From positions 310,001 to 374,000 of IMG/VR virus record IMGVR_UViG_3300032236_001850: a DNA stretch of 64,000 bases; one strand, written 5' to 3'. Below are positions 17,923 through 54,792 of this stretch, piece by piece; positions within the stretch are counted from its first letter, which is position 1; each line of letters begins with the position of its first letter. The position numbers were made by a program, and so were the translations under genes. Below the pieces are notes generated by a model. It saw only the letters and a program-made list of their open reading frames with translations. It was not told where the DNA came from and ran no database searches.

Positions 17923-20900
17923 ATGGCAAATCTAAATCTTAATTTTTATAATAAAAACGGGAATCCATTAAATTTCGATTATATAGGACCAACCGGACCG
18001 ACTCCTCTTGATACTAAATTCTCCCACATATTAAGTGATTCTCCATTAGTTGCTGGTTATTTTGAATGGACCGACAATCCGGATGACTATACATTAACAC
18101 TAAATATAAATGATGTAAACAATACGAATTTATATAAGTGGTGTATCGAGGCTGAGGATTTTATTGCTAAAGGTGCAACTCTATACCTTAATGGATTAAT
18201 TCCTGTTGCAAATACAAATTTTAAGGGAAAGGTATCCTCAGTTACGATAAATTCTAATCAAACGTTTGACGTTGTTTTACCAAAGAGCCATTTCCTTGGA
18301 CAAAGTATATTAAGCTATGATACCCAAGTTTATTTTGAGGGAACTTATGAGAACAGACCTGGTGGATATTTCAAAGGTAACATTTATTTTGATCCCATTT
18401 CAACTAGTCTTTATGAGAATCAGCAAATATTCGTTGTTCAGGAATTTTTAAATCATTCCGGAGATTTAGTGTATGGATTACCTCACACATCCAATCTTGG
18501 TTTAACCGGAGGTAAATGGAGAACAAGATGGTATAATGATAATTATGGGGATATTGACGTTTCCGAGATTATATTTACCTATGCCATAGAGGACCAGCTG
18601 GAAGGTGGTGACGGACAACCTCTTATTGTTAGTTATCCAAATATGGTTATGCCAGTTGGCTCAAGTCTTAGTGATTCGTATTCAAATGGGTTTATAATTA
18701 GTAATAATATAGTTTCTGATGCTATAGGAATAAATGTTGCACTTAATTCCCCGGATGATCTGGAAAATGTTTATGAAAGGAAACTTATTGTTGAGGACAT
18801 ATCAATCGGAACCCCACAAAAAGTTATAGAAATTGACTTTTATGGACAGACAGTTGGTGAGGATGAGAGGTTTAAGGTGCTTCTTGAAAATATTGGAAGA
18901 TCGTTTTACAATAGTGATTCCATAATACTTAGAGATCACGATCCTGCTGAACCAGTTCCAAACTTTTTGGAAATCAACGAAAAAAGAAAGGAGTTACTTA
19001 TAGCTGGTGAGGATATATTCCCATATATAGGTAGTTATAAAGGCCTTATTAATGCCCTTAAATTCTTCGGTTATCAGGACATGAGAATTAAGGAGTATTG
19101 GTTGAATCTAAATTATAAGAACCTAAAACTTGAATCACCATTACAACAAAACCAATCTTTCCTTAATAAAATAAAAAATGAACAAGCAAAGAATGGTTAT
19201 TCACAATCATACACGATAGGGGATGTTCTTGATAATGAAAATTCAGGTAAATATAAATTAACACAGACATATGGACCTGACAATAAAGGAAATTATGTTC
19301 TTAATGTTACGTCCGAGAATTCTCAACTCCCTAGTAAATCACTAAAGAAAACTTCACTGTTTGGTCTTTATTATGATCTAAATAAGGTTACTGATGATGT
19401 TGACGAGTATGGATACCCTGTGGTTGTTGATGCTTTTAAATTCACTCAAGAGGAAGTTCTTATAAAAATCTTTGCTCTAAAGCAAAGATTGAAAAGAGAT
19501 TATCTTCCATTAAATGCCAGAATAATAGATATCACTGGGGAAGGTGTTTATTTCATGATACAAAACACAAGATCCTGGACTGATCAGATGTTAAGATCTG
19601 ATATAAACATAGGTTATGACTTTGATTTTTTTCCAAACCCAGATTTTGGCTTTATTGAGGATCTTAGAAATTTCACGGTAAGACCAAATCCAAACTATAT
19701 TCAGATCCCAAGCTCCTATGATAATTCATACAGTATTGATGTTTCCTTTCCTGGTGGAACCGGTAGTGCAATAAGATTTACCGGTGATATTCCTAATGGT
19801 ATAACTGGTGATAATCCAATATTAAAATTACAAGCAGGTAAGTCATACACTTTTAATGTTACTGATACTAATTCAACGGGATCGAATCTTAACATTACTT
19901 CCTTTGCTGGGTTTCCAAATTATCCTTACCAGTGGTCAACAAATACACCAACAGGTATTGTTAATAACGGAGCAACCGGTGGGTATTCCTTGCAATGGTA
20001 TATAGCACCTGATGCTTCGGGAACTATACATTATTATTCCACAACAAATCCAAGTCTTATGTCAGGAGTTATACAGATAGTACCTGCAACAGTATCGGAT
20101 CTTGGTAACATTATAAATCCTCTGGATGTCCAACAAAATTATACAGCAGCACAAAACGAATCACTTCTATCAGCAATAGCCAAATTTTATGATTTAAAAC
20201 AGAATGGTGAAATATTGGAACTTGGCGATGGTAGATTTGATCCTCCTGCTTATATAGATCCAGTAACGGGTAAGATGTACGAAACACCTGTGGGAATGCC
20301 GGTAATTCTGGAACTCTCTGCAAATAAGTGGATATGGAATGAATTAAATATAGATTGGGACGCATTACTTGTGCCAACTTATAGACCTGGTGATAGGGTT
20401 AAAGTTAAAGCTACAGGAATATTTGGATCAGTTATTACCGTTTATTATAGTAACGGCGAATATGAAATAGCTCTTGACAATTCAACTACTGGAATATTTG
20501 GTGAGGCTGAATTATACTCTGGTGTACAGAATTACAGCATGCTCAATTGGAAGAATATAGATTTTTCCAATATGATGGAAATTGAGTGGATATTAAATAA
20601 ATCCGCAACACAGACCGGTACACCTTACCATTTCGAATTTAGAGGATCCATAGTTGATTATTATAAACTTGCCCACTTCTTACCTTACACCGGAGAATAT
20701 CAAGTCATATGTAACACGTATGACGCTTTTAACGCAAAGACAACCGTTATTAAAAATGCATCAATCTACGTTGATCCGAAAACTGTCGATATAGATTCTT
20801 GGACTAGATATAGAGAGGTTGAAAATTATCTATGGGATAATGTTGATAGAGAATGGAGAGAATATGAATCCATATGGGAATATCCAGCCGAAGGATCAAC

Positions 20901-22710
20901 CATAGACGAACTTAGAAAAAAAATACCTTCGGAGATTCTTGATTTTGCAACATACGGAAATAAATCAAGAGATGGACAGGATGTTTATGTGAGAACAACT
21001 GAACCACCAACCGGAGCTTATGGTACAATAAAACTAAACCAAACAATTCTAAGTATTTCTTCCGTTGAATCCTTACAGATCTCGACCGGACAATATGGTT
21101 ATGCAAACATTATAACTCCTGTTGTACATGATCTTATGAGTGGTGACGAAGTAACTATAACCGGTAGTATTCCACAAATTAATGGTAGATGGTATGCTAC
21201 TGTTGTAGATCCGTATACGTTTTATATTCCAGTAACTCTTGATTATTCATGGAGCGGTGTTTTGAATCAAAGTACACCACCACAAAAGCTTTATGTTGAT
21301 ACTTCCATATACAATTCTCAAAAAATACTTGGTAGTGGAAGTTTATCTGTGTATGTTAATGATAGACTTATTGGATATAGTGAAACAGGTGACAGTTTAT
21401 ATAACACTGCAAATGAGATAACTTCAGCAATAAATTCATTAAGAACCTATCCTGATTATTTCGCTTCTTGTGAAAATCCACAGGAAGATCCAGTAACAAT
21501 CACAATTTATGCTCCTAGTGAACTTGGAGCAAATCAGAACGGGGTTTCTTTGAGAGTTCAAGAGAGTGGTTCAATTAATATATTTTCATTTACCCCTTCT
21601 CTAACCGGTGGTATTAATCCTAATGATTATTATGTTTATTGGGATGAAAATATGACAGAATATCCCAATCCAAATCTTAAATATTGGGGAACTAAAAGAT
21701 TGAATTGGGAGATATTCAACGAAAGTACCTGGGAGGATGGTTATGCTCATTCTTGGTATGATTATGAATTTAATAATGATTGGCTTGGTGGATATGAGTT
21801 ACATAGTTTAAGACACCTTGACACATTAAAGATATCGACCGCTAATGAAACTTATCCGTTTCCAGAAACTATGGTTTTCAGCGGGAGTGGTAAATTCAAA
21901 ACGTTAACACTTTCTAGTGCAGCAGCACAACTTAATTCTGCTGGACCTAATATAGAAAATTTTTATTATAGAGTTATACCAGACGACACTGGATCCATGC
22001 TAGCTACGGTTGGGCCAATAAATGTTGTTGTTGGTAATAGTGGATTGGTTAATGGACCGTATTATCCGCCACCGTCATTAGTTGGCGGTAGTCCATTGCT
22101 TATCGCTAATTTTGGTTATACTGGAGGTTCTCCTGTTACAACAACTACAACAACCACGACGACTAGTACAACCACAACAACAACGACAACCACAACAACA
22201 ACTAGTACAACCACAACAACAACGTTGCCTCCAACGACAACGACAACCACAACTGCTCCTCTTTATGATTGTAGTTTGTCTGGAACCGCTGTGGTTAATT
22301 ATCCAACTACAACCACAACAACCAGTACAACAAGTACTACTACAACCACAACTGCTCCACCATATGGAACATTTAGGGTTAGAAATAGTACAGGACATAC
22401 AGTAACAGGTAATTTTCAAATTACCTTGAATTCTGTTCCACAAAATGCTTACAGCGCTGGTTATGCCTCAATACCTCATACTGGATATGTTGATTTACCT
22501 TTAAATGTTTCATATACTACACCAATAACTGGATCATACGTGGTAACATTCTCAGGAACTGGTATAGGTACATCTAATTTATGTCAGTTACTTAATGCAC
22601 ATGTTGTTGGACCTGTTAATTTCACTTATATTGGCGGTAGTCAATATTACGCAGGATTCACTCTAAATAGTGGAAATTCTCAAAATGGATTTGAATTTGG
22701 TGTATATTAA
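17923..22710 (+). CDS. large baseplate wedge protein (gp7/P2 gpI-like segment) with C-terminal mucin-like poly-Thr linkers
   Basis: 1595 aa; FPYIGSYKGLINALKFFGY..IKEYW resembles the gp7/gpI wedge motif; follows gp6-like gene. Confidence 0.6.
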   Translation: MANLNLNFYNKNGNPLNFDYIGPTGPTPLDTKFSHILSDSPLVAGYFEWTDNPDDYTLTLNINDVNNTNLYKWCIEAEDFIAKGATLYLNGLIPVANTNFKGKVSSVTINSNQTFDVVLPKSHFLGQSILSYDTQVYFEGTYENRPGGYFKGNIYFDPISTSLYENQQIFVVQEFLNHSGDLVYGLPHTSNLGLTGGKWRTRWYNDNYGDIDVSEIIFTYAIEDQLEGGDGQPLIVSYPNMVMPVGSSLSDSYSNGFIISNNIVSDAIGINVALNSPDDLENVYERKLIVEDISIGTPQKVIEIDFYGQTVGEDERFKVLLENIGRSFYNSDSIILRDHDPAEPVPNFLEINEKRKELLIAGEDIFPYIGSYKGLINALKFFGYQDMRIKEYWLNLNYKNLKLESPLQQNQSFLNKIKNEQAKNGYSQSYTIGDVLDNENSGKYKLTQTYGPDNKGNYVLNVTSENSQLPSKSLKKTSLFGLYYDLNKVTDDVDEYGYPVVVDAFKFTQEEVLIKIFALKQRLKRDYLPLNARIIDITGEGVYFMIQNTRSWTDQMLRSDINIGYDFDFFPNPDFGFIEDLRNFTVRPNPNYIQIPSSYDNSYSIDVSFPGGTGSAIRFTGDIPNGITGDNPILKLQAGKSYTFNVTDTNSTGSNLNITSFAGFPNYPYQWSTNTPTGIVNNGATGGYSLQWYIAPDASGTIHYYSTTNPSLMSGVIQIVPATVSDLGNIINPLDVQQNYTAAQNESLLSAIAKFYDLKQNGEILELGDGRFDPPAYIDPVTGKMYETPVGMPVILELSANKWIWNELNIDWDALLVPTYRPGDRVKVKATGIFGSVITVYYSNGEYEIALDNSTTGIFGEAELYSGVQNYSMLNWKNIDFSNMMEIEWILNKSATQTGTPYHFEFRGSIVDYYKLAHFLPYTGEYQVICNTYDAFNAKTTVIKNASIYVDPKTVDIDSWTRYREVENYLWDNVDREWREYESIWEYPAEGSTIDELRKKIPSEILDFATYGNKSRDGQDVYVRTTEPPTGAYGTIKLNQTILSISSVESLQISTGQYGYANIITPVVHDLMSGDEVTITGSIPQINGRWYATVVDPYTFYIPVTLDYSWSGVLNQSTPPQKLYVDTSIYNSQKILGSGSLSVYVNDRLIGYSETGDSLYNTANEITSAINSLRTYPDYFASCENPQEDPVTITIYAPSELGANQNGVSLRVQESGSINIFSFTPSLTGGINPNDYYVYWDENMTEYPNPNLKYWGTKRLNWEIFNESTWEDGYAHSWYDYEFNNDWLGGYELHSLRHLDTLKISTANETYPFPETMVFSGSGKFKTLTLSSAAAQLNSAGPNIENFYYRVIPDDTGSMLATVGPINVVVGNSGLVNGPYYPPPSLVGGSPLLIANFGYTGGSPVTTTTTTTTTSTTTTTTTTTTTTSTTTTTTLPPTTTTTTTAPLYDCSLSGTAVVNYPTTTTTTSTTSTTTTTTAPPYGTFRVRNSTGHTVTGNFQITLNSVPQNAYSAGYASIPHTGYVDLPLNVSYTTPITGSYVVTFSGTGIGTSNLCQLLNAHVVGPVNFTYIGGSQYYAGFTLNSGNSQNGFEFGVY
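22138..22353 (+). repeat. low-complexity ACN-codon repeat encoding poly-Thr tracts
   Basis: A run of about 28 Thr/Ser, then LPP-T7-AP, then YP followed by about 16 Thr/Ser; synonymous codons are mixed. Confidence 0.95.
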
Positions 22711-22723
22711 AATTATATAAAAA

Positions 22724-23662
22724 ATGACAGTAACAATACAATTAACAGCAGCAGGAGCAGATACCGGATCATTTTCAATATTTTCCAATTTGGATCTAGT
22801 GACTCCCATAGTAACAGGTATTTCTAGAGCCTCTTTGTTAACCGGGTATGCGGTGGTTGTTCCCAATGGAGCTACAAGTGTTATAGTAAAATCAAACTCT
22901 ACACATTGTACAAATCAAGTAACTATACCTATAACAGGAATAACTACAACAACCACGACAACAACACAGATGTGTACAAGTGCAACTTACGGATATGATC
23001 CCGATATTGGACAAACAGCATGCGATAATTATATAAGTGGACCGAGTGGTCAATCTGTATATCAATGGAATGGATCTATTCTCTATAATTACTCATCTAC
23101 CGATCCTTGCGGATTAACAGCATCTATTGCTGATCCTGGCTATTATTCAGATGGAACGAACATTTGGTATTGGGACGGATCTGGTAGTTTCACCTATGAT
23201 AGTGCATGTAGTAATCTTAGAAATATAACAATCCATGCTAAGAGAAATGGATCAATAGTATCATCCGATAATCACGTAAGAATTGTTGTTAGTCAGGACG
23301 GTGGGGCAACTTGGAATGTAATAACCCCTAATTCAGTATTAACAGCCTCCTTTACATCAACAAATCAATGGACATACAGTGCAACTGCAGGAAATCCTTT
23401 ATGGATTGGTGCACTCCTTAGTGATGCTTTTACTGGAATCTCATTTGGTTCGGCCCTATCACCATCAAACACAACCTGTTTAAATCTTATGGCATATTGT
23501 GGTAATCCTTCGACTGTATCAGTGGTAGCTCCTGGGTGTACTTCCTTTGCTGGTCCGTTCTCATATAATTATGGAATAGTTAGCACTGATGCTGACATAT
23601 ATTTGAATTTTAATACGGTGTATGACGAGTTTTTAGGTAATATTTATATAAGATGCTATTAG
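22724..23662 (+). CDS. Cys-rich putative virion surface protein with a Thr8 linker
   Basis: 312 aa; small beta-rich N-terminal domain, TTTTTTTT at 22943-22966, several Cys. Confidence 0.65.
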   Translation: MTVTIQLTAAGADTGSFSIFSNLDLVTPIVTGISRASLLTGYAVVVPNGATSVIVKSNSTHCTNQVTIPITGITTTTTTTTQMCTSATYGYDPDIGQTACDNYISGPSGQSVYQWNGSILYNYSSTDPCGLTASIADPGYYSDGTNIWYWDGSGSFTYDSACSNLRNITIHAKRNGSIVSSDNHVRIVVSQDGGATWNVITPNSVLTASFTSTNQWTYSATAGNPLWIGALLSDAFTGISFGSALSPSNTTCLNLMAYCGNPSTVSVVAPGCTSFAGPFSYNYGIVSTDADIYLNFNTVYDEFLGNIYIRCY

Positions 23663-23705
23663 AAACAAACTTTGCTAGCTATCTATAATAATTAAAAGCT
23701 AATTG

Positions 23706-24668
23706 ATGTTAAATAAGGTTGTTTTTATTTGTGCCCAACCGGATGTTCCATATTTTCATTGGCAAGTGGAGGTTTTCATTCATAATGCAATGAAAAGTGG
23801 AATAAATCCAAATTGGATAGAAATTTTGTTCGGATATGATAATAACCCATCCCCCGAAGGTATGGCTCTTGCTAGAAAATATCCGTATGTGAGGGTTTTC
23901 TTTTATAAGAAGGATGTAATTGAAAATTACGGGTACATTCCAATAATAAGACCAAATATTCTTGCAAAACATTTTGCAGCATATCCTGGATTATCTGATG
24001 AAAATATTTTTTATCATGACTCTGATATAATATTCAGAGAACTCCCAAATTTTGATTCCTTAATAAAAGATAAAACATGGTATCTTAGTGATACTGTTTC
24101 ATATATAGGATCAGATTATATAAAGGGAAAATCTGTTGAATTATTCAACGAGATGTGTAATATAGCTGGTGTTGACCCTTTGTTAGTGGAGGAGAACAAT
24201 AAAAATTCAGGGGGTGCTCAATATTTAATGAAGGGAATAGATAGCGATTTCTGGAAGGAAGTCGAGTTTGTTTCCCTTGATCTTTATAAATACATGAGCG
24301 ACAGGGAGACGGAGGAAAGAAATAAATTATCAGAAACTGAGAATGAAACTTATAATCCAATCCAAAAATGGTGCGCAGACATGTGGGCAGTATTATGGTG
24401 CGGACTTAAAAGAGGTAATGAAATTAGAATATCTGATGAGCTTGGATTTAGCTGGGGATCATCCTACGGTACAACTGAATGGTACAAATATAAAATCATG
24501 CATAATGCCGGTGTAACTAATAATTTAAACGGCAAGGTTTTCTACAAAGGTGATTTTATAAACGAAGCTCCATGGGATCACGATTTTAGTGATATTGATA
24601 AAACCCACAATTCATATAACTACGTCCAAGCAATATTGTACGCTAAGGAAAAAAGGGATTCCCAATAG
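23706..24668 (+). CDS. GT-A glycosyltransferase resembling peptidyl-Ser/Hyp O-glycosyltransferases (GT96/GT95-like)
   Basis: DxD motif FYHDSDIIFR; PYFHWQ..HN..KSG, YIPIIRP, GGAQYLM, KWCADMWA and late HN motif; ATG at 23706 preferred over TTG at 23703. Confidence 0.7.
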   Translation: MLNKVVFICAQPDVPYFHWQVEVFIHNAMKSGINPNWIEILFGYDNNPSPEGMALARKYPYVRVFFYKKDVIENYGYIPIIRPNILAKHFAAYPGLSDENIFYHDSDIIFRELPNFDSLIKDKTWYLSDTVSYIGSDYIKGKSVELFNEMCNIAGVDPLLVEENNKNSGGAQYLMKGIDSDFWKEVEFVSLDLYKYMSDRETEERNKLSETENETYNPIQKWCADMWAVLWCGLKRGNEIRISDELGFSWGSSYGTTEWYKYKIMHNAGVTNNLNGKVFYKGDFINEAPWDHDFSDIDKTHNSYNYVQAILYAKEKRDSQ

Positions 24669-24717: not shown

Positions 24718-26598
24718 ATGGCAGATCAACAATTAGGTATAAATCAAGGGGATCATATTTATTATTATGACCTTAGCACCGGAGGGTTATCAAGAAATTG
24801 GACTTTCCAGGGAGGAACACCGCCCGGTGCTACTTCATATGGACCTGATGTTAGATATTATGGCGTTAATTATGATGGATATAGCACGGGATTGGTTATA
24901 ACTGGTGCAGGTGGTATAACTGCTGCTGCATACAAACCAAACATAATTGTGGTTTATCCTGAGATATTCGATCCTGGCATCCAGATAACGCAGGGTATGG
25001 CTGAGGTTATTGATAGCCCAATGAGTAAGGTTGTTACATATTCAGTATCTGGATCTGCAAGTAGTGGTTTTTCTATGTATAATTGGACCATACCTCAATT
25101 AGGTCCAACATCCGGATCCCTATTATCTTATGTGAATTATGCTTGTACTGATTGGTACACCCTAACTGGAAGCTATCTTGGATCTCCAAATGCATCTTAT
25201 GTTGCAACTGTAGGTCTGGATGTTATCTCAACTGTGGGTAACGAATCTGCTATGACAGCATCATTTAATTTCAGAAAGATAGGAGTTGTTGAGAACGTAA
25301 ACTATTGGTCACCCGGTACATACGCAACAGCTGGGAGATATTACGACTCCTCAACATTGCCACAAAGAACCTCTGCGTTAGGTTTAGGTGGAACCTCTTT
25401 AATATTTAAGATTGATCTTGCTCCTTATACCCCGAAGTGGAATAATACAAGTTTTCATTCCACTCAAGAAGCTGTTTATTTTTGGCCAAATAGTCCCGAC
25501 GTTTCTAAAACATATTCTTCGATAAAAACAAATATCATACTTAACGGTTCTGCTCTATCTAGCGCAGGTATAACTGGTGGATACACAACATCTCCAAGGA
25601 CAATGTCTGGTAATTATATAATACCTGGGGACATAGCATCAAATTTCAATAGTAAATTTTACATCAGTGATAATCTATCCGGTAATATTTTTACAACCCT
25701 GGTTGATGGACTCAGGAAATGGAACACTGCTGCAGTTAGTGATTTTGTTTTAAATAAATACTATCTCTCCGGGTCAAGTAAGTTTATAGAACTTGGCGGA
25801 TATAAGAAGGTTTTTATAGAAAGCCCTGATCCATTAGGTTTTGGTTACTTTATTAGACCACCTTTTGCTGATCTTGCATCGGGAATAGGGTATAAGAATA
25901 ATTATCTTAGTTATCTTTGGGATGGTGGATGGGCAGCAGAAGATGGCTACGGTTTACCAACCTCTGCATATCACGGCATTTGTATACCCACAAGTGCTTT
26001 TATAGAGGAAATATACGGTGGAGGTGTTGTTAATGTAGATGTGAGAATAATATTGAAAGATTCTGCAGGTTCCACCATAACGGATTTCCAATTCGATCTT
26101 TCAGCTTCAAGTAATACCGGTAATACCCCAGATTTTTACATGATAAGTGCTTGCGATACCTCATATGGTAACTTTTCAGGAATAGTAACTTTGCTAAATG
26201 CAGGGATAGCGGCTAGACCCGGTGGGCTTTCCAATAATATAATATTTGAATTAAATAATAGTCTTGCACCATATTACGATGGTGGTGCGGAGGGAATTTA
26301 TTTGGCTAATTCTTATTTTGGTGGGATGAAGATGTCAATTAAAGATCCTAAAACGAGTTCAACTTATTCCAACCGTTATATACATTCCATGGAAATATCA
26401 TGGGGATCTCAGATGCAAAGCTTTTTAACTGAAGTTGGATTGGATTTTGGACCTTTCCCAACAGCCCCTTTTGCATCTAGCGTTACTGCTAGTGGAGCTG
26501 CTATGGCATCCTGGACGGGTCTACCGTCCAAAATAACAGTCCCAACATCATCATATACTAATTATTTTAGAGGTTGGAAAATTGGTGGGTCTTTATAA
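24718..26598 (+). CDS. putative virion protein with N-terminal PKD-like domain
   Basis: YYDLSTGGLSRNWTFQGGTP...PDVRY is a PKD-type pattern; G/S/T/Y-rich. Confidence 0.6.
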   Translation: MADQQLGINQGDHIYYYDLSTGGLSRNWTFQGGTPPGATSYGPDVRYYGVNYDGYSTGLVITGAGGITAAAYKPNIIVVYPEIFDPGIQITQGMAEVIDSPMSKVVTYSVSGSASSGFSMYNWTIPQLGPTSGSLLSYVNYACTDWYTLTGSYLGSPNASYVATVGLDVISTVGNESAMTASFNFRKIGVVENVNYWSPGTYATAGRYYDSSTLPQRTSALGLGGTSLIFKIDLAPYTPKWNNTSFHSTQEAVYFWPNSPDVSKTYSSIKTNIILNGSALSSAGITGGYTTSPRTMSGNYIIPGDIASNFNSKFYISDNLSGNIFTTLVDGLRKWNTAAVSDFVLNKYYLSGSSKFIELGGYKKVFIESPDPLGFGYFIRPPFADLASGIGYKNNYLSYLWDGGWAAEDGYGLPTSAYHGICIPTSAFIEEIYGGGVVNVDVRIILKDSAGSTITDFQFDLSASSNTGNTPDFYMISACDTSYGNFSGIVTLLNAGIAARPGGLSNNIIFELNNSLAPYYDGGAEGIYLANSYFGGMKMSIKDPKTSSTYSNRYIHSMEISWGSQMQSFLTEVGLDFGPFPTAPFASSVTASGAAMASWTGLPSKITVPTSSYTNYFRGWKIGGSL

Positions 26599-47278: not shown

Positions 47279-50200
47279 ATGCATTTTAATACTAAATACA
47301 TATTTAAGGGTGATACCGAAAAAGAAATAATTGGAAAAATCAATTATAATTTTGATCAAATACTTTCATTTGCAATAGGTCCCGATGGTCATCCTGGTCC
47401 AAGAGGAGCAACAGGTATCTTTGGACCTGCTGGTAAAAGAGGTCCGAGTGGGAGCCCTGGAATTAGAGCATCGAAATGGTATAAGCAACCGACGGAACCT
47501 TCCGATGCACCAAATACTAATGATGTTTGGATAGACAATTCGGTTTCTGATGGAAATATAAAGATATTTAATTATCCTATAACAAATTACCAATGGCAGA
47601 ACAGCGGATATTCTTTTTTGAATTCCAAATATTTCCAATCCTATTCATATATCCAAGGACCTGGTGGTGCTACTGATAAATATGTGATAGGTTTTAAATA
47701 TCCTGGCGGTATAACAGGTTCAGCTAATACCTCTCTTTTAATAAGTGATTTCAATCTTAATTCTGTAAAATCAAATCCTAATAATTCCAAGGTTGTCGTA
47801 TCCACACAAGATCAAATTGATAGGCCCATTATGACTTTTTCTAAAAATGGTGCTATCTCCGATGATGTTCCATCATTCTATTGGAACTCGACAGGTAATA
47901 ATGCTGGATTGAAGTTTGATATTGGCGGTGCTTTTAGTGTAACAACAAATAATGATTTTTCTATAGACAGCGGACTTGCTAGAACCCTTATTACATCCAA
48001 TCTTTCAACATTTAGAAACAATCAGGGTGCATTCAATGTTCACGGTGATGGTGATTTTTTATTTGCTAGTAACATTGGTTTAGGTGTTGGCGGATTTTTA
48101 AGTATAACTACAAAAAATTTACAGGTTGATAATTCTTCTGTAAATCATTATGGCGGTGTAACTATAACATCACCTCTGACATCGACCTATATACTTAATT
48201 CGAAACCGAGTTCCCCGTCATATCTGAATGGAATATCTGCTAATATAAAAACGTCTGCTGTTATAAGAACCTTTGAATTTGAAGATTATACTGGGAATGC
48301 CATTATGTACGGTAAACCATCTGGATCTGTTTCTAGTGGAAATCTTGCACAGACCGTGTTTGGCACTAGCGGTGGTTTTACTGGTGGAACTGGAGGACCT
48401 TTTTCTTACCATGTTAGAAAGGTGAAAGAGGTTAGACAATCAACAACTGGATTAAGTGCTAGACAATATCTAACAACCACAACAAACAATCTAACCGATG
48501 TATTGGATATGTCAACTAATACTATATGGGAAAATGACATAATTCTTGCAACACCTACCGCATACAGTAGCGTTTCTAGTTCAAATTTAGGAAGTTTTAA
48601 AGTTGGTGACATAGATTCAAGCTTTAATTATTCATCGGGCTTAGACATTTTTGGGTCAGGATTTAAAAATTCTTTAACTGGAACCGGTGTTTATGATGCT
48701 GTTGTTAATGATGTTTTTAGATTAACAGATGGAAGCGGAAGCACAATATTTGCTGGAAATTTTAAATATTATAATGATCAGCCAGTGAAAACGGGATCTT
48801 TAACTAATGTATTAGGTCTGGTTAAAGTCAATTCTGATGGTACGATGGATACAACATTCAGAGCCAACATTTCTGCAATTTCTTTAGTTTCTGTTACCTC
48901 CATTAATGGTGCTGTAGTTGATGAGTCTGGTGGTCCTTACGGAAGTGGTCTTATTTATATTTATGGTTGCTTTACTCATACTACAAACAAAAATGGGATA
49001 TTGTGTTTAAATTTGGACGGAACACTATATAGTACGTTCAATTCAAATATGGGTATTGGAATAAATTCTGGTTCCTCTATATTCAAAGCTGGTATCGATC
49101 CAACAGGTACTAATTTATTTGCTGTTGGTGATTTTACTTATTATAAAACAACAACAACTTTTAGAAATAAGTTAATGAAGATAAAAATAAATGGAGCATC
49201 GGATGGATTACTTAATACATCATTTTTAAGTGGATCGACTTCGGTGGGACCTGGATTCGTTGGTTCAAGCAATATTCCCTACTGTTTTGATTTTTTGCCA
49301 AGTGGTAATATAATTGTTGGAGGATCCTTTAATTCCTTCAATTCATCAACGAGCGGTTCACCATTTACTATTAATTCTGTCATTGAATTGAATAGCAGCA
49401 ACGGTTTAAGAGTAACCACTGGAGGATTTGCTAATATAATTTATTCTACATTTATAGCATCTGATCCTATTGTTTCATCTATTAAATATAATAGTTATAA
49501 TTCCTATATCTATATAGGTGGAAGTTTTTCCAAAATAAATGGGACAGATTACGGAAGAATAGCAAGATTTACCATAACCGGAACAACTTTTACCCTCGAT
49601 TCAACTTTATCCTCAACTACAGGATTTAATGATATTGTTTATGATTTTGCTTTTGATGGTAGTAAAGTTTACGTTGGCGGAAGATTTACTTCTTATAGAG
49701 GAACATTATGTCCCGCTTTTGTTAAAATAAATAATAATGGATCAATAGATCCTACCGCTTCGATATATCACAACATTGTTAGTCCTAAATCAATTCAGCC
49801 AACATTTGAATGGACTGTTGGATTGGTTAAAAAAATGTACCTTAGTATAGTTGATAATGAATTCATGTATGTTGGTGGTTTTTTAAATAGTGTATTTTCA
49901 GCATCAGCTTCGAATAACGGAATTTATATCAAGGTACCATCATCCATAACACAAGATTATTTACCTGTTTATACCGATGGTACTACTACTAATTATAGAG
50001 TATTTCTTAATGATCCAGGCAATGATGCAAAGTTACACTATATAAAGGGATTGGTATTTGATGCTGGTTTACCGAATGCTGTGACGTCATATGTTGATTT
50101 TTCACAGGGTGCTACTGGTTGTCAATATGTGGATCTCATGTGGGTTTCTAAAACAAGTACAGCAAATATTGCTAATCCTAGACTTTTTTATAAAAACTGC

Positions 50201-51133
50201 GAGGGTTTTAGCGGTTATGTTGACTTTGGTTCTAATGGTGTTTATTCTACCGCACCTGCATCATCAAATGGTGGACAGAATGTAAGTGTTACCTGGGAAT
50301 TTAGTAGACAACAAACTGGATCGTGTAACATTTATAAAAATGGAACATCAATTTCAAATCTTCTTATAAATAAAACAACTTCAGGAAATGGTTCTTTACC
50401 ATACTCCATAGGAGATAAAATATATTCTAACGTTTCCGCTGGTGGTGCTAGCTCCGGTTATATCGGTGCCTATGCATCATTAAGAATAACGAAAACTTCA
50501 TTAAGTACTGGTATAACAACAACTGAATTCACACAAAGCATTACTGCAGATGTTGGTACTGTTAATAATTTCTCCAATCCTGTTACGTTAGTTGCTGGAT
50601 ATTCTTATTATATAGAATGTGTTGCACAATCTACACCAACAGGTGGAGGTTGTTGTTTTGTTGGTGATACTCTTGTAACCATGTATAATGGAAGTTTAAA
50701 AAATATTTCTAGTGTAATAGCTGGTGATCTTATATTAACATATAATGTTGAAACGGATCAATATGGAAAAGGTACTGTAACGTCAATAGAGTCACCTATA
50801 AAGGACGATATTATAGAATTCATACTATCCAATGGAAATTCAATAAAAGCCACAACTGAGCATCCATTTTGGGTTATAGGAAAGGGTTGGAGCTCTTATA
50901 GTCCTGACAGAACGATGTTTGATCATCAAATGGAAGTTTCTAAATTGTCCATTGGTGATGTACTATTGGACGAAAGTGGAAATGAAATTGAATTATTATT
51001 TATGAATAATGATGCTCAAGATCTTCAAAGAGTTTATAATATTCTTATGGAAGATGGAGATCACACTTATTATGCAAATGGGATATTGGTTCATAACAAG
51101 CTTCAGTATAACGATGGAAATGGTTTAGTATAG
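47279..51133 (+). CDS. collagen-like tail fibre protein, paralogue 3, with delta-60-like beta-propeller repeats and a C-terminal Hint domain
   Basis: KINYNFD, then 10 Gly-X-Y triplets (47378-47467); repeats such as VKVNSDGTMDTTF, IIVGGSFNSFN, VYVGGRFTSY; Hint blocks at the C-terminus. Confidence 0.75.
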   Translation: MHFNTKYIFKGDTEKEIIGKINYNFDQILSFAIGPDGHPGPRGATGIFGPAGKRGPSGSPGIRASKWYKQPTEPSDAPNTNDVWIDNSVSDGNIKIFNYPITNYQWQNSGYSFLNSKYFQSYSYIQGPGGATDKYVIGFKYPGGITGSANTSLLISDFNLNSVKSNPNNSKVVVSTQDQIDRPIMTFSKNGAISDDVPSFYWNSTGNNAGLKFDIGGAFSVTTNNDFSIDSGLARTLITSNLSTFRNNQGAFNVHGDGDFLFASNIGLGVGGFLSITTKNLQVDNSSVNHYGGVTITSPLTSTYILNSKPSSPSYLNGISANIKTSAVIRTFEFEDYTGNAIMYGKPSGSVSSGNLAQTVFGTSGGFTGGTGGPFSYHVRKVKEVRQSTTGLSARQYLTTTTNNLTDVLDMSTNTIWENDIILATPTAYSSVSSSNLGSFKVGDIDSSFNYSSGLDIFGSGFKNSLTGTGVYDAVVNDVFRLTDGSGSTIFAGNFKYYNDQPVKTGSLTNVLGLVKVNSDGTMDTTFRANISAISLVSVTSINGAVVDESGGPYGSGLIYIYGCFTHTTNKNGILCLNLDGTLYSTFNSNMGIGINSGSSIFKAGIDPTGTNLFAVGDFTYYKTTTTFRNKLMKIKINGASDGLLNTSFLSGSTSVGPGFVGSSNIPYCFDFLPSGNIIVGGSFNSFNSSTSGSPFTINSVIELNSSNGLRVTTGGFANIIYSTFIASDPIVSSIKYNSYNSYIYIGGSFSKINGTDYGRIARFTITGTTFTLDSTLSSTTGFNDIVYDFAFDGSKVYVGGRFTSYRGTLCPAFVKINNNGSIDPTASIYHNIVSPKSIQPTFEWTVGLVKKMYLSIVDNEFMYVGGFLNSVFSASASNNGIYIKVPSSITQDYLPVYTDGTTTNYRVFLNDPGNDAKLHYIKGLVFDAGLPNAVTSYVDFSQGATGCQYVDLMWVSKTSTANIANPRLFYKNCEGFSGYVDFGSNGVYSTAPASSNGGQNVSVTWEFSRQQTGSCNIYKNGTSISNLLINKTTSGNGSLPYSIGDKIYSNVSAGGASSGYIGAYASLRITKTSLSTGITTTEFTQSITADVGTVNNFSNPVTLVAGYSYYIECVAQSTPTGGGCCFVGDTLVTMYNGSLKNISSVIAGDLILTYNVETDQYGKGTVTSIESPIKDDIIEFILSNGNSIKATTEHPFWVIGKGWSSYSPDRTMFDHQMEVSKLSIGDVLLDESGNEIELLFMNNDAQDLQRVYNILMEDGDHTYYANGILVHNKLQYNDGNGLV
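50654..51097 (+). other. Hint (intein-like/BIL) autoprocessing domain, 148 aa, no endonuclease
   Basis: Block A CFVGDTLV, block B ATTEHPFW, blocks F/G RVYNI...HTYYANGILVHN; the +1 residue is Lys. Confidence 0.9.
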
Positions 51134-51161: not shown

Positions 51162-51169
51162 GATATATA
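51162..51169 (+). promoter_or_regulatory. GATATATA motif, putative late promoter
   Basis: Intergenic, 15 nt before ATG 51185. Confidence 0.55.
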
Positions 51170-51184
51170 ATAAAATTATAAAGT

Positions 51185-51943: not shown

Positions 51944-51948
51944 TAGAA

Positions 51949-52461
51949 ATGAGAAAAATTTTTACATTATTAATGGCGTTAGTTTTGACGTCGCTATACT
52001 CACAAGTAACACCTGAAATAAAATATCCAAAATTTGAGACAGATTCACTTGGGCAAAAGGTTATAGTTATGACAATCCCGCAAGCGATGAAACTTAACAA
52101 TAACTCAGATCTTTTGGAAAAGTTTGAAGCTCAGGATATAAAAATGAAAGAATACGAGACACTTTGTGTCAAAGTTATTTCTGAAAAGGATGATGTGATT
52201 GCTAAGTTAAACCTAACAATAGGAAAACAAGATGGTCAATTATTAGTTAAGGACGAAAAAATCAAATCCCTCCAAGGTGAAATTTTGGGATGGATGGAAA
52301 GAAATGGTGTTCTTGAAAAACAATTGGCAAATAGACAGCAGGTAATAGATGAAAAAGATAAGCAATTAAGAAGATTAAAAACTAAGATGGTTGTCGGAGG
52401 AATAGGTGGTGGAGCTGTTATAGTTGGCCTTGTTCTTAAAGCTGTAGGAATCATCCACTAA
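51949..52461 (+). CDS. secreted coiled-coil protein with C-terminal Gly-rich hydrophobic helix
   Basis: Signal peptide MRKIFTLLMALVLTSLYS|Q; C-terminus MVVGGIGGGAVIVGLVLKAVGIIH. Confidence 0.55.
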   Translation: MRKIFTLLMALVLTSLYSQVTPEIKYPKFETDSLGQKVIVMTIPQAMKLNNNSDLLEKFEAQDIKMKEYETLCVKVISEKDDVIAKLNLTIGKQDGQLLVKDEKIKSLQGEILGWMERNGVLEKQLANRQQVIDEKDKQLRRLKTKMVVGGIGGGAVIVGLVLKAVGIIH

Positions 52462-52482
52462 AAATATTAAAAAAATATAAAA

Positions 52483-54792
52483 ATGGCATTTAGCACTTCA
52501 TCTAAATACGTTCAGATAACTCCATATTTACTTATGGAATATATGTATGCTGATCAACCTCAACCGGAGACACATTTTGTTAATACCGGTTCTTCGACTG
52601 TTGGTTACGATAAATTAGTAAATGGATTTAGATCGGGTGATGTACAGATTTTCAATCCAAATAATGATTATGATATAACGCATAATACAACACAGGATAG
52701 TGTTGTTAGGATAAGCGAAAACTCCTTTGTTACGTTAGATTCCAACCTTATCATACCATTCAATGATTATGCTGACGAATTAACTAATACTGCTAATTTA
52801 CCAATAGTATTTCCATCAAATCTTTTAGTTGTTTATGATAGCGTTAGGTATCATATTAGAGCTGGATATAATCTTGGAAACATAGATGGTCTTATAATGT
52901 CAATTGAATATACTGATGTAGATAATACACAAGTTCTTGTTTCACAGATACTTATAAAGAAAGGAACAAGCGAAGATTACAATCTAAATCCAAATCCTGT
53001 TACCATTGGTTCAAATATTTATGACAAGTATATTGAGATAAAAATCCCCAACCTTAGGGATATGAATAATAAATACCAAGCTGCTTCGTCTGTATTTAAA
53101 CCACAAACTTTAGCTGGACTTATTAGTCATAGTGGATTTGGATTCATATATAATGCTCCAATAAGAATAACTGCATGGCAAATCCAAAGTACTGTTGATT
53201 ATGCAGGTTATGCTAAATATGATTCTTCAAAAATAGCTACTCTTTCTCTCGAACAGGAAGATCAGTTTGGGAACATAGGTGCAACAATAAGACCTTCTGA
53301 CAGAGGTGAATTTTTTGAATTCTATGCAACTGATAATGAGGGATTCATTGAGGATTTTATATTGTTCCAAAATTCTTTGGGTAATGCTTATTATATAGGA
53401 CACCAAATCGAAGTGTTAGAACAGATTGGTGCATCACTTATAAGAACGTCACATTTTGATTCTGTACAAACAACAGCATATGATTCACCAAACTACTACA
53501 GACCGATAGTTAGGAATGCCGCTGTTGCAGCAAGTTTTACACTTAGATACACAATGACCCTTATTAATAGTGTCGATCAAAGTAGAACCATAAGAATATC
53601 TTCGTACACTTCAGCCAATCCAGCCGAATGGGGATTGAAAATAAAACCAATTCAGCTTAGTACTTTTCCACAGGTTCAGAAAATATACAATAGAATATAT
53701 TCTCAGCCAACAATAAACATGAACAGTAGTAACCCTGCTCCTAAGGAAATCCTAAAATACACTAATGTTTTTATAAATCAGAATTACGTTACAGCGAGCA
53801 TGGATAATCTTACTTTTACCAACAATTCATTAAGAGTTGATTCAGGTTCTTCCCAAACTGTTGCTATAGGTAGTGGTAAACTTACGATATCCATATCTCC
53901 ATTTGACACCTATATGAAATTCAAATTTATAAAAAGTGGACCTTCCGGAGATCCGGTTCCTATAGATCTTACAAGTTCTGGTGAATTCAATATTTCTTTT
54001 ATAGATCTTAGTGGTAGTAAAATACAAATACCTTCATTAAAGGATAACACCCTTGCAAATCCTGGATTGGGTGAGATTGCTTTTAAAATTGACGAATCAG
54101 CAGCTGGTAGAATTTTACAAATCAACGACCGAAGATTTTTCATAACAAATGGTGTTTCTATAAATCAAACAAACCTTTCTGCTACAGAAAAGAGCACAAT
54201 AACTGTGAATGCTGGAACAACAAATAATGTTTTAGAAAAAAGTATTGAAAGCGTTATAGCAGATAGAAGAGATGCTAATAAAGCTATAAAAGGTGCAAAT
54301 AACTATGTTAATACAGCAGCACAGAATAATATATTAACTCCTGTTAACAATTCAAATTCTGTTATATATTGGGGTTATTGGAAAAAGAACGGAGAGGAAG
54401 ATTTTGCTACCGGAGCTACTGGGTCTACAAGCTTACCTGTTTCTATGGGAAGCACAGGAGCAACAGCCGCTGCTGTTCCGAACCAAGTCAATGCTCCTGC
54501 GTCATCAATTAGATCGATAATGCCAGCAACGTCAGGATCAGGTACAGCGGGTATAGGTACGCCAACAGCAGCTTCAACAAATCAAACTCTAGCTGGATCC
54601 GCTTTAATAGCATCATTGAGTGCTGAAATGAACGGTTATAAAGCTATTGGTTGGGCTGATCAAACAGTAATAGATTATTTCCTTACTCCTGGTAAACCTG
54701 GAAGAATAAAATATCCAAATATAACAAAAGCTGATGTTGTTAAAGCTGGTAATGGTATATTAGCGCCTGCATCTTTAAAAAAATTAACTTAA
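52483..54792 (+). CDS. putative virion structural protein
   Basis: 769 aa, beta-rich, with an A/T/G/S-rich linker near the C-terminus. Confidence 0.5.
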   Translation: MAFSTSSKYVQITPYLLMEYMYADQPQPETHFVNTGSSTVGYDKLVNGFRSGDVQIFNPNNDYDITHNTTQDSVVRISENSFVTLDSNLIIPFNDYADELTNTANLPIVFPSNLLVVYDSVRYHIRAGYNLGNIDGLIMSIEYTDVDNTQVLVSQILIKKGTSEDYNLNPNPVTIGSNIYDKYIEIKIPNLRDMNNKYQAASSVFKPQTLAGLISHSGFGFIYNAPIRITAWQIQSTVDYAGYAKYDSSKIATLSLEQEDQFGNIGATIRPSDRGEFFEFYATDNEGFIEDFILFQNSLGNAYYIGHQIEVLEQIGASLIRTSHFDSVQTTAYDSPNYYRPIVRNAAVAASFTLRYTMTLINSVDQSRTIRISSYTSANPAEWGLKIKPIQLSTFPQVQKIYNRIYSQPTINMNSSNPAPKEILKYTNVFINQNYVTASMDNLTFTNNSLRVDSGSSQTVAIGSGKLTISISPFDTYMKFKFIKSGPSGDPVPIDLTSSGEFNISFIDLSGSKIQIPSLKDNTLANPGLGEIAFKIDESAAGRILQINDRRFFITNGVSINQTNLSATEKSTITVNAGTTNNVLEKSIESVIADRRDANKAIKGANNYVNTAAQNNILTPVNNSNSVIYWGYWKKNGEEDFATGATGSTSLPVSMGSTGATAAAVPNQVNAPASSIRSIMPATSGSGTAGIGTPTAASTNQTLAGSALIASLSAEMNGYKAIGWADQTVIDYFLTPGKPGRIKYPNITKADVVKAGNGILAPASLKKLT

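What the first reader, a model, noticed from the sequence alone, without database searches (positions are those of the whole stretch)
17923..54792. Dispersed G-x-T-G motif across unrelated virion proteins: possible modification sequon
Seen: GATG, GVTG, GPTG, GITG, GGTG, GTTG and GYTG recur in nearly all large structural ORFs, for example GPTG/GLTG/GGTG/GITG/GATG/GYTG in 17923, GGTGTTG/GVTG/GATG x2/GPTG/GITG in 26619, GTTGSYGMTGS in 32521, YGATG x2 and GYTGGTGG in 38455, GATGST/GSTG in 52483. My by-eye count is about 35-40 in roughly 11,000 aa; a rough composition estimate (G and T near 9% each) predicts under 10. The motif is nearly absent from the replication enzymes. Knowledge: the GPT-rich collagen-like region of Bacillus BclA is O-glycosylated. 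Inference: these are surface-loop acceptor sites for the neighbouring glycosyltransferase or another modifier.
Basis: partly seen in the sequence, partly recalled or inferred. Interest (0 to 1): 0.7.

Follow-up and report, generated by a model that had tools for sequence, protein, structure and literature searches.

The report
Clade-specific Gly-x-Thr-Gly motif on virion proteins
The four-residue motif G-x-T-G really is about four to five times too frequent in the exposed particle proteins of this 434-kb phage and its close relatives, but it does not depend on the glycosyltransferase gene next door, which instead goes together with poly-threonine tracts, so what the motif is for remains open.

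Summary
Observation confirmed. In the 15 ORFs from 17923 to 54792 (11,802 aa), G-x-T-G occurs 40 times against 8.5±2.9 in shuffles. Permuted patterns sit at expectation, and the DNA pattern is found in the coding frame only. The motif is G-[A/P/V]-T-[G>A]. Thr is strongly preferred over Ser. 26 of the 40 sites are isolated single units and only 4 lie in real collagen-like runs.

The excess is shared by 27 related contigs (701 against 133). It is absent from distant relatives (PAU, PTm1; LR756500 and MaF61 weak at most) and from T4. It is confined to virion proteins, including the capsid and sheath proteins outside the window. The flanks are unrelated in sequence. Sites turn over between relatives while their density is kept.

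A likely GT-A glycosyltransferase does lie in the block (23703-24668). It co-occurs with poly-Thr tracts, in this clade and in four unrelated phages. Three clade members lack both the GT and the poly-Thr tracts, yet keep full G-x-T-G enrichment.

My best reading, held with low confidence, is a Thr-centred recognition or acceptor motif for a different clade-wide factor. The close rival is a purely structural loop unit derived from collagen-type Gly-X-Thr triplets. Neither can be settled without mass spectrometry.

The parts
17923..22710 (+). 1595-aa virion protein with 6 isolated G-x-T-G sites (aa 22, 193, 611, 626, 683, 1398). Its poly-Thr/Ser region is aa 1406-1477 (DNA 22138-22353).
   Evidence: Orthologues in G002 and G003 have 6 and 9 sites; those in LR756500 and PAU have 0. 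Orthologues in G004, G005 and G007 lack the poly-Thr region but carry 5-8 sites.
22724..23662 (+). 312-aa Thr-rich protein with a T8 tract (aa 74-81, DNA 22943-22966) and no G-x-T-G. It belongs to the GT/poly-Thr cassette.
   Evidence: Missing together with the GT in G004, G005 and G007.
23703..24668 (+). The 'neighbouring glycosyltransferase': a 321-aa protein of phrog_4417, predicted GT-A fold.
   Evidence: Its own ESM-Atlas model has pLDDT 0.91. TM is 0.94 to Glyco_transf_7C-containing proteins, 0.71-0.75 to HPAT (GT95) proteins and 0.61 to GT8. FYxDSDxIF, NSGGAQ and KIMHNAGV are invariant in four distant homologues. No Pfam or PDB hit by sequence.
24718..26598 (+). 626-aa virion protein with 1 site (aa 284).
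   Evidence: Orthologues in G004, G005 and G007 have 5, 2 and 5 sites.
26619..30713 (+). 1364-aa virion protein found only in the clade, with 7 sites (aa 133, 136, 145, 380, 630, 752, 1005).
31598..32503 (+). 301-aa Gly/Thr-rich protein with 1 site (GVTG, aa 235), kept in 20 of 22 orthologues.
32521..34737 (+). 738-aa conserved virion protein with 3 sites. GTTGSYGMTG (aa 177-186) is kept in 22/22 and 18/22 orthologues.
   Evidence: The AF2 model is unusable (pLDDT 37).
34751..38434 (+). 1227-aa core virion protein (phrog_29329), shared with PAU, Lak and PTm1 phages. 1 site (aa 1006), not enriched.
38455..44004 (+). 1849-aa virion protein with 6 sites (aa 486, 860, 901, 940, 1220, 1223). At the GYTG-GGTG site the number of units varies from 0 to 6 among orthologues.
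44007..45548 (+). 513-aa fibre-like protein with a collagen-like run of 10 G-X-Y triplets (aa 35-65, DNA 44109-44201; 2 sites inside it) and 4 isolated sites (aa 101, 129, 463, 488).
   Evidence: In the AF2 model (C-terminal part pLDDT 63-86) all four isolated sites lie between β-strands.
45579..47270 (+). 563-aa paralogous fibre-like protein with a collagen-like run (aa 35-65, DNA 45681-45773). 2 sites.
47279..51133 (+). 1284-aa fibre-like protein with a collagen-like run (aa 34-61), DUF5122 propeller repeats and a C-terminal Hint domain. 5 sites.
52483..54792 (+). 769-aa virion protein with 2 sites (aa 644, 656) in a variable segment.

Best explanation
G-x-T-G here is a genuine short linear motif, G-[A/P/V]-T-[G>A], carried on exposed loops of the particle proteins (fibres, baseplate-type proteins, sheath outer domains, a capsid loop). 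It is found in one clade of huge phages.

Shown:
- It acts at the protein level and depends on the order of the residues.
- It is specific for Thr.
- It is absent from the same proteins in more distant relatives.
- It arose many times in unrelated sequence contexts.
- Its density is maintained while individual sites are gained and lost.
- It does not depend on the neighbouring GT-A enzyme. That enzyme's genomic partner is poly-Thr tracts.

Inferred: a four-residue, order-specific, lineage-specific motif that keeps being re-created in unrelated folds is most simply explained by something in this lineage that recognises it. I take it to be a Thr-centred acceptor or recognition site for a different, clade-wide, trans-acting factor. 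O-glycosylation of the Thr is the leading candidate. A 422-aa GT2-family protein is present in every clade genome that covers that region, and a host enzyme is also possible. On this reading the long (G-x-T)n arrays of this genome would be the same site in tandem. No modification has been observed, and the enzyme is not identified.
For: Enrichment and specificity:
- 40 against 8.5±2.9 in the window.
- In seven divergent clade members: G 5.5x and A 3.3x at position 4; Thr 5.5x against Ser 1.3x at position 3; x = Ala 16.6x, Pro 15.5x, Val 10.8x.

Clade-wide, not general:
- 27 related loci give 701 against 132.9, with permuted controls at 0.75-1.8x.
- For non-collagen proteins of 500 aa or more: G002 37/8.1, G003 44/10.2, G000 54/15.8, against PAU 5/5.6 and LR756500 16/9.1.
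- T4 7/5.6 and 4/3.8; PTm1 4/4.1.
- No other G.?G residue is comparably enriched in other phages.

Same proteins, different lineages (G000/G002/G003 against LR756500/PAU):
- sheath 8/5/5 against 1/0
- capsid 4/4/3 against 2/0
- ORF 17923 6/6/9 against 0/0
- ORF 38455 6/4/4 against 0/0

Other points:
- The capsid has a clade-specific GATGATGAT loop insertion, and GPTG where LR756500 has GPLG.
- Flanks are no more alike than control windows.
- Turnover: about 10 shared and about 10 lineage-unique sites per pair at 55-65% identity, against 3.9 expected in all.
- 13% of motif columns are kept in more than half of the orthologues, against 0-8% for permuted motifs.
- Loop location: logo, AF2, and gaps at 19% of motif-Thr columns against 4% elsewhere.
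- The genome is rich in glycosylation genes. The 422-aa GT2 protein is in G001-G003 and G007.

Precedents:
- Glycans on the capsids of mycobacteriophages Che8 and Rita (PMC11256854, citing Freeman 2023).
- Thr preference at Y in prophage collagens, and Thr glycosylation as a stabiliser of collagen (PMC3368898).
Against: - No modification has been seen and no enzyme is tied to the motif.
- The neighbouring GT is not needed.
- GMD and GT25 are patchy across equally enriched genomes.
- Homologues of the 422-aa GT2 occur in other huge phages whose sampled virion regions are not clearly enriched (5/2.5 and 2/1.9). In this genome that gene sits among nucleotide-metabolism genes.
- The motif's Thr is only slightly better conserved than other Thr (0.65 against 0.55, p = 0.09), and its Gly residues are no better conserved than other Gly.
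- Ser is not enriched at all, which many O-glycosyltransferases would tolerate.
- 57 clade-only proteins showed no obvious Thr-modifying enzyme among their top Pfam families.
- Only one usable structural model supports exposure.
Confidence: 0.35

Rival explanations
1. A purely structural and evolutionary unit. G-[A/P/V]-T-G is one collagen-type Gly-X-Thr triplet closed by the next Gly. It serves as a short, uncharged loop or hinge between β-strands. Units arise by point change and by 9-nt duplication, and they expand or contract, giving a continuum from single units to the 36-triplet arrays of this genome. No trans-acting reader is involved.
For: - The x-residue preference matches that of the long arrays (A 66, P 21, V 16).
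- Run lengths form a continuum: 1:76, 2:19, 3:11, 4:13 and so on up to 36.
- The number of units varies at 11 of 52 site clusters, for example 0-6 units at one site of ORF 38455 and 2-3 in the capsid loop.
- Sites lie between strands and in gap-rich columns.
- The motif's Thr and Gly are hardly better conserved than other Thr and Gly.
- Replacements at the Thr are small residues: S 28%, A 14%, P 10%.
Against: - The same folds in PAU, LR756500 and PTm1 do without the motif.
- No structural rule explains Thr 5.5x against Ser 1.3x with no excess of Asp or Asn.
- The clade's own conserved collagen stalks use varied Y residues, yet only G.TG is enriched as a single unit.
- G002 and G003 have no long (G-x-T)n arrays but the same excess.
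- Slippage can only copy adjacent units, while most sites are isolated and lineage-unique sites exceed chance 2.5-3 fold.
Confidence: 0.3
2. One reading: the sites are acceptors of the neighbouring glycosyltransferase (ORF 23703-24668).
For: - The enzyme is GT-A-like, related in fold to protein/peptide O-glycosyltransferases (HPAT), and lies inside the virion block.
- It is present in G001-G003, G006 and G008, and absent from PAU and LR756500, which lack the excess.
Against: - G004, G005 and G007 lack the gene at its syntenic place and anywhere on their contigs, yet score 33/5.3, 29/5.4 and 27/4.7.
- Phages iLp84 (2/3.1) and MA9V-3 (3/2.8) carry the enzyme without any excess.
- In five lineages the enzyme sits with poly-Thr tracts, and in this clade the two are lost together.
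Confidence: 0.05
3. An artefact of composition, of local Gly/Thr-rich patches, of collagen-like runs, or of a repeated homologous domain.
For: - These proteins are richer in Gly and Thr than their outgroup orthologues.
- Four sites lie in true collagen-like runs and ten in runs of 2-3 triplets.
Against: - Block shuffles that keep local composition still give 9.2±2.8 against 40, and 36 against 9.3 with the runs removed.
- Permuted motifs are at expectation.
- Flanking windows are no more similar than controls.
- The pattern is frame-specific.
Confidence: 0.02

Closest known systems
BclA-type collagen-like glycoproteins (Bacillus exosporium BclA; Gly-X-Thr repeats O-glycosylated on Thr). From my own knowledge; the references are listed in PMC3368898.
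   Same: The same tripeptide unit (GPT, GAT, GVT). This genome also has long (G-x-T)n arrays in fibre proteins outside the window (genome 107879-116677 and 230589-233804). A cluster of sugar-nucleotide and glycosyltransferase genes lies 3.5 kb from the smaller arrays.
   Different: In the window, 26 of 40 sites are single units in globular proteins and cannot form a triple helix. Clade members without any long array are just as enriched. No glycosylation has been shown.
Virion glycosylation in mycobacteriophages (Che8, Rita: phage-encoded GTs put glycans on capsid proteins; PMC11256854, citing Freeman et al. 2023).
   Same: A phage-encoded glycosyltransferase inside or beside the structural genes, and Ser/Thr-rich acceptor stretches on major particle proteins. 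This matches the GT plus poly-Thr cassette found here.
   Different: That parallel fits the poly-Thr tracts, not G-x-T-G. The GT family here (phrog_4417, HPAT-like GT-A) has no Pfam assignment. Whether it is the same family as the mycobacteriophage enzymes was not tested.
Collagen-like segments of phage tail fibres (Pfam Collagen PF01391; PHROG 'collagen like minor tail').
   Same: ORFs 44007, 45579 and 47279 each have about 10 G-X-Y triplets near the N-terminus. Thr is a preferred Y residue in prophage collagens (PMC3368898).
   Different: Only 4 of the 40 sites are in these runs. Their Y positions are varied (V, T, S, R, I, N, D), so they do not explain a Thr-specific single-unit excess.
Virus-specific atypical glycosylation sequons, and sequon turnover in viral surface proteins (chlorovirus capsid protein; the G-x-[T/S]-G core of the EGF O-GlcNAc site). 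From my own knowledge, as leads only.
   Same: A short motif, dispersed over surface proteins, with density kept while positions change.
   Different: No chemistry is known here, and the folds, enzymes and cell compartment differ. This is a resemblance, not membership.

Membership tests
Collagen triple helix (PF01391) | An uninterrupted run of many G-X-Y triplets | tested here: not met
   Of the 40 sites, 26 are single units, 8 are in 2-triplet runs and 2 in a 3-triplet run. Only 4 lie in runs of 9-10 triplets. Those three runs match Pfam Collagen only below its threshold (E 8e-4 to 8e-3).
BclA-type glycosylated Gly-X-Thr region | A long tandem G-X-T array in a surface fibre protein | tested here: not met
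   None in the window. Such arrays are present elsewhere in the genome but absent from the equally enriched G002 and G003.
BclA-type glycosylated Gly-X-Thr region | Sugar covalently bound to the Thr | not testable with these tools
   Needs mass spectrometry of virions or of expressed domains.
Acceptor sequon of the neighbouring GT (ORF 23703-24668) | The motif excess co-occurs with the enzyme across phages | tested here: not met
   The excess persists in G004, G005 and G007, which lack the gene. There is no excess in iLp84 and MA9V-3, which carry it.
Acceptor sequon of some Thr-modifying enzyme | An order-specific, residue-specific excess limited to exposed target proteins, gained independently | tested here: met
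   This feature is necessary for such a sequon but does not prove one.
Acceptor sequon of some Thr-modifying enzyme | An identified enzyme whose presence tracks the motif | tested here: inconclusive
   The 422-aa GT2 protein is in G000-G003 and G007 and absent from PAU and LR756500. Distant homologues occur in huge phages without a clear excess.
GT-A glycosyltransferase (for ORF 23703-24668) | GT-A fold | tested here: met
   By ESM-Atlas structure search, TM is 0.94, 0.75 and 0.61 to Glyco_transf_7C, HPAT and GT8 clusters. The protein's own model has pLDDT 0.91. Both sides of the comparison are predicted models.
GT-A glycosyltransferase (for ORF 23703-24668) | DxD metal/nucleotide-sugar motif | tested here: met
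   FYxDSDxIF is invariant in four homologues of 35-72% identity.
GT-A glycosyltransferase (for ORF 23703-24668) | Sequence membership in a curated GT family | tested here: not met
   No Pfam hit even at E 10. No hit to PDB sequences with a profile. PHROG 4417 is annotated 'unknown function'.
Phage virion glycosylation cassette (GT plus Ser/Thr-rich tails) | A GT gene next to particle proteins that carry poly-Thr tracts, the two gained and lost together | tested here: met
   Seen in the window, iLp84, MA9V-3, phiCTP1 and VPE25. Joint absence in G004, G005 and G007. This concerns poly-Thr, not G-x-T-G.

The most novel reading that the evidence does not exclude
G-[A/P/V]-T-G is a new Thr-modification sequon, most plausibly O-glycosylation by an enzyme other than the neighbouring GT. 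A clade of huge phages would use it to coat capsid, sheath, baseplate and fibres. The long (G-x-T)n arrays would be its tandem form. A separate GT/poly-Thr cassette would be a second, optional glycosylation system in the same particles.
Probability: 0.25. Interest if true: 0.8.

Novelty: new variant of a known kind. Interest (0 to 1): 0.55.

Why it matters
I know of no description of a short motif that is selectively kept on the exposed proteins of a whole phage lineage. If it is an acceptor site, it would give a sequence-readable marker of particle modification in uncultured huge phages. That would extend phage virion glycosylation, so far shown in mycobacteriophages, to a new sequon and a new host range. 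It would also bear on particle stability, host recognition and how phages are seen by defence or immune systems.

If it is purely structural, it shows how collagen-type triplets seed and remodel the surface loops of receptor-binding proteins.

Separately, the work links an unannotated and widespread phage protein family (phrog_4417) to poly-Thr tails on capsid and tail-tube proteins. This gives a directly testable prediction of virion O-glycosylation in cultured Lactobacillus, Enterococcus, Clostridium and Chryseobacterium phages.

Tried and rejected
- **Composition or local Gly/Thr patches.** Rejected by whole-protein and block shuffles and by permuted motifs.
- **A DNA-level motif.** Rejected by the frame test. 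The ACT codon bias in the motif (60% against 35%) is largely the general preference for ACT before Gly.
- **A repeated homologous domain.** Rejected, because flanking windows score like control windows.
- **A general property of phage structural proteins, or a lineage 'turn dialect' replacing Asp/Asn.** Rejected: T4, PTm1, PAU, LR756500, MaF61, iLp84, MA9V-3 and LR756501/2 show no comparable G.?G excess.
- **Spill-over from long (G-x-T)n arrays.** Weakened: G002 and G003 have none.
- **The GDP-fucose/GT cluster as the modifier.** Weakened: GMD is only in G001, and GT25 only in G000 and G003.
- **Structure mapping.** The ORF 32521 model failed (pLDDT 37). The ORF 44007 model is only partly usable and had no fold match in PDB. 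PDB sequence searches found nothing.
- **Pfam scan of 57 clade-only proteins.** No kinase or further GT among the top 25 families.
- **Literature searches.** No description of this motif found. Freeman 2023 is not held.

Full report
**Setting.** The window is bases 310001-374000 of a single 434,509-bp virus record with direct terminal repeats and 35% G+C. By tblastn its conserved 1227-aa protein (34751-38434) relates it distantly (24-33% identity) to the uncultured huge phage LR756500, the Lak megaphages, Tenacibaculum phages PTm1/PTm5/pT24, Sphingomonas phage PAU, Chryseobacterium phage MA9V-1 and Flavobacterium phage MaF61. ORFs 17923-54792 form a block of large, mostly unannotated proteins. 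PHROG hits are to families of unknown function and to tail fibres. Three paralogues (44007, 45579, 47279) have short N-terminal collagen-like runs. A PhoH gene lies on the opposite strand (30714-31487). The capsid protein (genome 298781-300505) and the sheath protein (265895-269263) lie outside the window.

G-x-T-G occurs 40 times in the 15 ORFs (11,802 aa).
- Whole-protein shuffles give 8.5±2.9 (maximum 18 in 1000).
- Shuffles inside 15-aa blocks give 9.2±2.8.
- With the three collagen-like runs removed the count is 36 against 9.3.
- Patterns with the same letters in another order give 8-11, and GxSG gives 13.
- Among all 8000 a.bc patterns, G.TG ranks second, after T.TT from the poly-Thr linkers.
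- The DNA pattern GGNNNNACNGG is found 40 times in the reading frame, never in the other two frames, and 4 times on the other strand.
- The other 23 ORFs of the window have 2 sites against 2.5 expected.

**Anatomy of the motif.**
- 26 sites are isolated single units, 8 lie in two-triplet runs, 2 in a three-triplet run, and 4 in real collagen-like runs.
- In seven divergent clade members the preferences are sharp. Position 1 is Gly (5.5x). Position 3 is Thr (5.5x), with Ser only 1.3x and no excess of Asp or Asn. Position 4 is Gly (5.5x), then Ala (3.3x). The x residue is Ala (16.6x), Pro (15.5x) or Val (10.8x).
- A non-redundant logo of 166 contexts shows only weak flanks: hydrophobic at -3, small at +4, hydrophobic from +5. 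This looks like strand-loop-strand.
- In the one usable model (ORF 44007; C-terminal part pLDDT 63-86), all four isolated sites fall between strands.
- Windows around the sites, with the motif masked, are no more similar to each other than control windows. The occurrences are therefore independent and not copies of one domain.

**Who has it.**
- 27 IMG/VR contigs carry an orthologue of ORF 38455 at 45-81% identity. All show the excess: together 701 against 132.9, with permuted controls at 0.75-1.8x.
- For non-collagen proteins of 500 aa or more, whole-record analysis gives G000 54/15.8, G002 37/8.1 and G003 44/10.2. PAU gives 5/5.6 and LR756500 16/9.1.
- T4 (7/5.6 and 4/3.8), PTm1 (4/4.1) and MaF61 (9/4.0) show little or none.
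- No other residue at position 3 is comparably enriched in those phages.
- Orthologue by orthologue, the clade has gained sites. For G000/G002/G003 against LR756500/PAU the counts are: sheath 8/5/5 against 1/0, capsid 4/4/3 against 2/0, ORF 17923 6/6/9 against 0/0, and ORF 38455 6/4/4 against 0/0.
- The clade capsid proteins have a five-residue insertion giving GATGATGAT in a loop, and GPTG where LR756500 has GPLG.
- All eight sheath sites lie in residues 237-570, outside the conserved C-terminal core that matches the sheath PHROGs.
- Genome-wide, G000 has 225 sites against 48 expected. Of these, 150 are in eight proteins with G-X-Y runs, including arrays of up to 36 triplets. G002 and G003 have no such G-x-T arrays and are just as enriched.

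**Dynamics.**
- Some sites are nearly invariant: GTTGSYGMTG in ORF 32521, GVTG in ORF 31598, GYTGGTG in ORF 38455. Many others occur in one to five orthologues.
- The motif's Thr is only slightly better conserved than other Thr (0.65 against 0.55, p = 0.09). Its Gly residues are not better conserved than other Gly. Columns at the motif's Thr are gapped in 19% of comparisons, against 4% for other Thr.
- Against relatives at 55-65% identity, about ten sites are shared and about ten are unique to each side. Chance predicts 3.9 in total.
- 13% of G-x-T-G columns are kept in more than half of the orthologues, against 0-8% for permuted motifs.
- Unit number varies at 11 of 52 site clusters.
- So the motif is continually re-created at more than the chance rate and is retained somewhat better than its permutations.

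**The neighbouring glycosyltransferase.** Pfam finds no GT in the window. ORF 23703-24668 (phrog_4417, 'unknown') has a confident ESM-Atlas model. That model matches Glyco_transf_7C-containing proteins (TM 0.94), hydroxyproline O-arabinosyltransferase-like proteins including PqqD fusions (0.71-0.75) and GT8 (0.61). It also has an invariant FYxDSDxIF motif.

Homologues occur in 77 phage records. In four of them the gene sits beside poly-Thr tracts:
- **iLp84.** The gene lies between the head genes and the adaptor. It is flanked by a capsid protein ending in T7SK, a 125-aa protein that is 34% Thr, and a tail protein ending in T7SK.
- **MA9V-3.** The gene directly follows two proteins with long poly-Thr/Ser tracts.
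- **phiCTP1.** The gene follows a tail-tube protein ending in poly-Thr.
- **VPE25.** The major tail protein ends in poly-Thr.

In the window, the two genes upstream of the GT carry poly-Thr (ORF 17923 aa 1406-1477; ORF 22724 aa 74-81). The same holds in G002 and G003. PAU and LR756500 have neither the GT nor the tracts.

**A natural experiment.** Contigs G004, G005 and G007 have no homologue of the GT. At the syntenic place the ORF 17923 orthologue is shorter, has no poly-Thr, and is followed directly by the ORF 24718 orthologue. The GT and the small poly-Thr protein are both missing. These phages are nonetheless fully enriched: 33/5.3, 29/5.4 and 27/4.7, with 5-8 sites in the 17923 orthologues. 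iLp84 and MA9V-3, which have the GT, are not enriched. The GT's partner is therefore poly-Thr, and G-x-T-G is independent of it. One caveat is that the three contigs are 21-51% complete.

**Other candidate modifiers.**
- The genome has GT2 genes at 94191, 245087, 245785 and 385957.
- A cluster at 237-250 kb holds GT11, GT10, GT25, a nucleotidyl transferase, a methyltransferase, GDP-mannose 4,6-dehydratase and an epimerase. It lies 3.5 kb downstream of small collagen-array fibre genes.
- GMD is found only in G001, and GT25 only in G000 and G003.
- The 422-aa GT2 protein with a helical C-terminal half is present in G001-G003 and G007 at 73-76% identity, and absent from PAU and LR756500 by BLAST. 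It sits among nucleotide-metabolism genes. It has 24-37% homologues in other huge phages whose sampled virion regions are not clearly enriched.
- A Pfam scan of 57 clade-only proteins showed nucleic-acid repair enzymes, ATP-grasp and RimK-like ligases, asparagine synthase and an M28 peptidase among the top 25 families.

**Weighing.** Composition, DNA-level effects, paralogy and a general structural habit are excluded. Two readings remain.

The structural reading sees a single collagen-type unit used as a loop. It fits the loop location, the shared x-residue preference with the arrays, the run-length continuum and the weak positional conservation. It does not explain why the same folds in outgroups lack the motif. 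It does not explain why Thr and not Ser, Asp or Asn, why only the Thr-type triplet is enriched as a single unit when the clade's own collagen stalks use many Y residues, or why isolated sites keep appearing at more than the chance rate.

The recognition reading explains those points: a Thr-centred acceptor or binding site for a clade-wide factor. It has precedents in Thr-glycosylated Gly-X-Thr collagens (PMC3368898) and in glycosylated mycobacteriophage capsids (PMC11256854). It has no direct evidence and no identified enzyme.

I give recognition 0.35, the structural unit 0.30, the neighbouring GT 0.05 and an artefact 0.02. The rest goes to something not yet thought of.

**Verdict.** The motif's lineage-specific, virion-specific excess appears to be undescribed.

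Noticed in passing
window 17923-24668; also L112 5334-9822, L113 17618-20918, L134 2844-4412, L135 3498-6755: A GT-A-like gene family (phrog_4417, annotated 'unknown') lies beside capsid, tail-tube or fibre proteins that carry poly-Thr tracts, in five unrelated phage lineages. In this clade the gene and the tracts are lost together. This predicts O-glycosylation of poly-Thr tails on virions of cultured Lactobacillus, Enterococcus, Clostridium and Chryseobacterium phages.
   Followed up: partly
genome 237362-248293 (locus L034 4362-15293), outside the window: A cluster of GT11, GT10, GT25 and two GT2 genes, a nucleotidyl transferase, a methyltransferase, GDP-mannose 4,6-dehydratase and a GDP-fucose-synthase-like epimerase. 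This amounts to a phage-encoded fucose pathway. It lies 3.5 kb downstream of small fibre genes with (G-x-T)n arrays (230589-233804).
   Followed up: partly
genome 107879-126062 and 230589-233804 (loci L035, L039): Fibre proteins with very long Gly-X-Thr arrays of up to 36 triplets, such as GATGATGSNGSN repeats. Two of them begin with the array directly at the N-terminus (MGSTGATG..., MGATGATG...). G002 and G003 lack these arrays. G003 instead has a 987-aa protein with a 182-triplet G-X-Y run of different composition.
   Followed up: partly
window 47279-51133, aa 1121-1273: The 1284-aa fibre-like protein ends in a Hint/PT-HINT (intein-like, AXH) domain, preceded by DUF5122 β-propeller repeats. 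This may be a self-cleaving C-terminal module on a fibre.
   Followed up: no
window 13035-14441 and 11885-13045: An Amidoligase_2-like protein (E 8e-5) lies next to an S1-domain protein, just upstream of the virion block. Both are conserved in the clade and in LR756500. Elsewhere, clade-only genes include a RimK-like ATP-grasp and an asparagine synthase. These are possible peptide-ligating enzymes.
   Followed up: no
genome 385957-387225 (L037 5957-7225): A 422-aa protein with an N-terminal GT2 domain and a helical, TPR-like C-terminal half lies among ribonucleotide reductase, adenylate kinase, gyrase B and UvdE genes. It is 73-76% conserved across the clade and has distant homologues in 630-735-kb phages and in Tunturiibacter phage Tunturi_5 (annotated there as beta-1,4-glycosyltransferase). 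Whether its target is DNA or protein is unknown.
   Followed up: partly
genome 298781-300505 (L040 2781-4505): The major capsid protein of the clade has a five-residue insertion giving a GATGATGAT mini-array in a loop that is short in LR756500, PAU and MaF61. The number of units differs between clade members (2-3).
   Followed up: partly
Several of them (2892, 5359, 6913, 9297, 14456, 15656) are conserved with PAU and LR756500 structural-region proteins and have no enzyme domains. They are Gly-rich yet carry only 1 G-x-T-G site against about 2 expected.
   Followed up: no
window 51431-52461: Two 170-aa ORFs between the fibre genes have no homologue in G002, G003 or the outgroups. The first has a weak match to Rz-like spanin (phrog_739, E 4e-6).
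   Followed up: no
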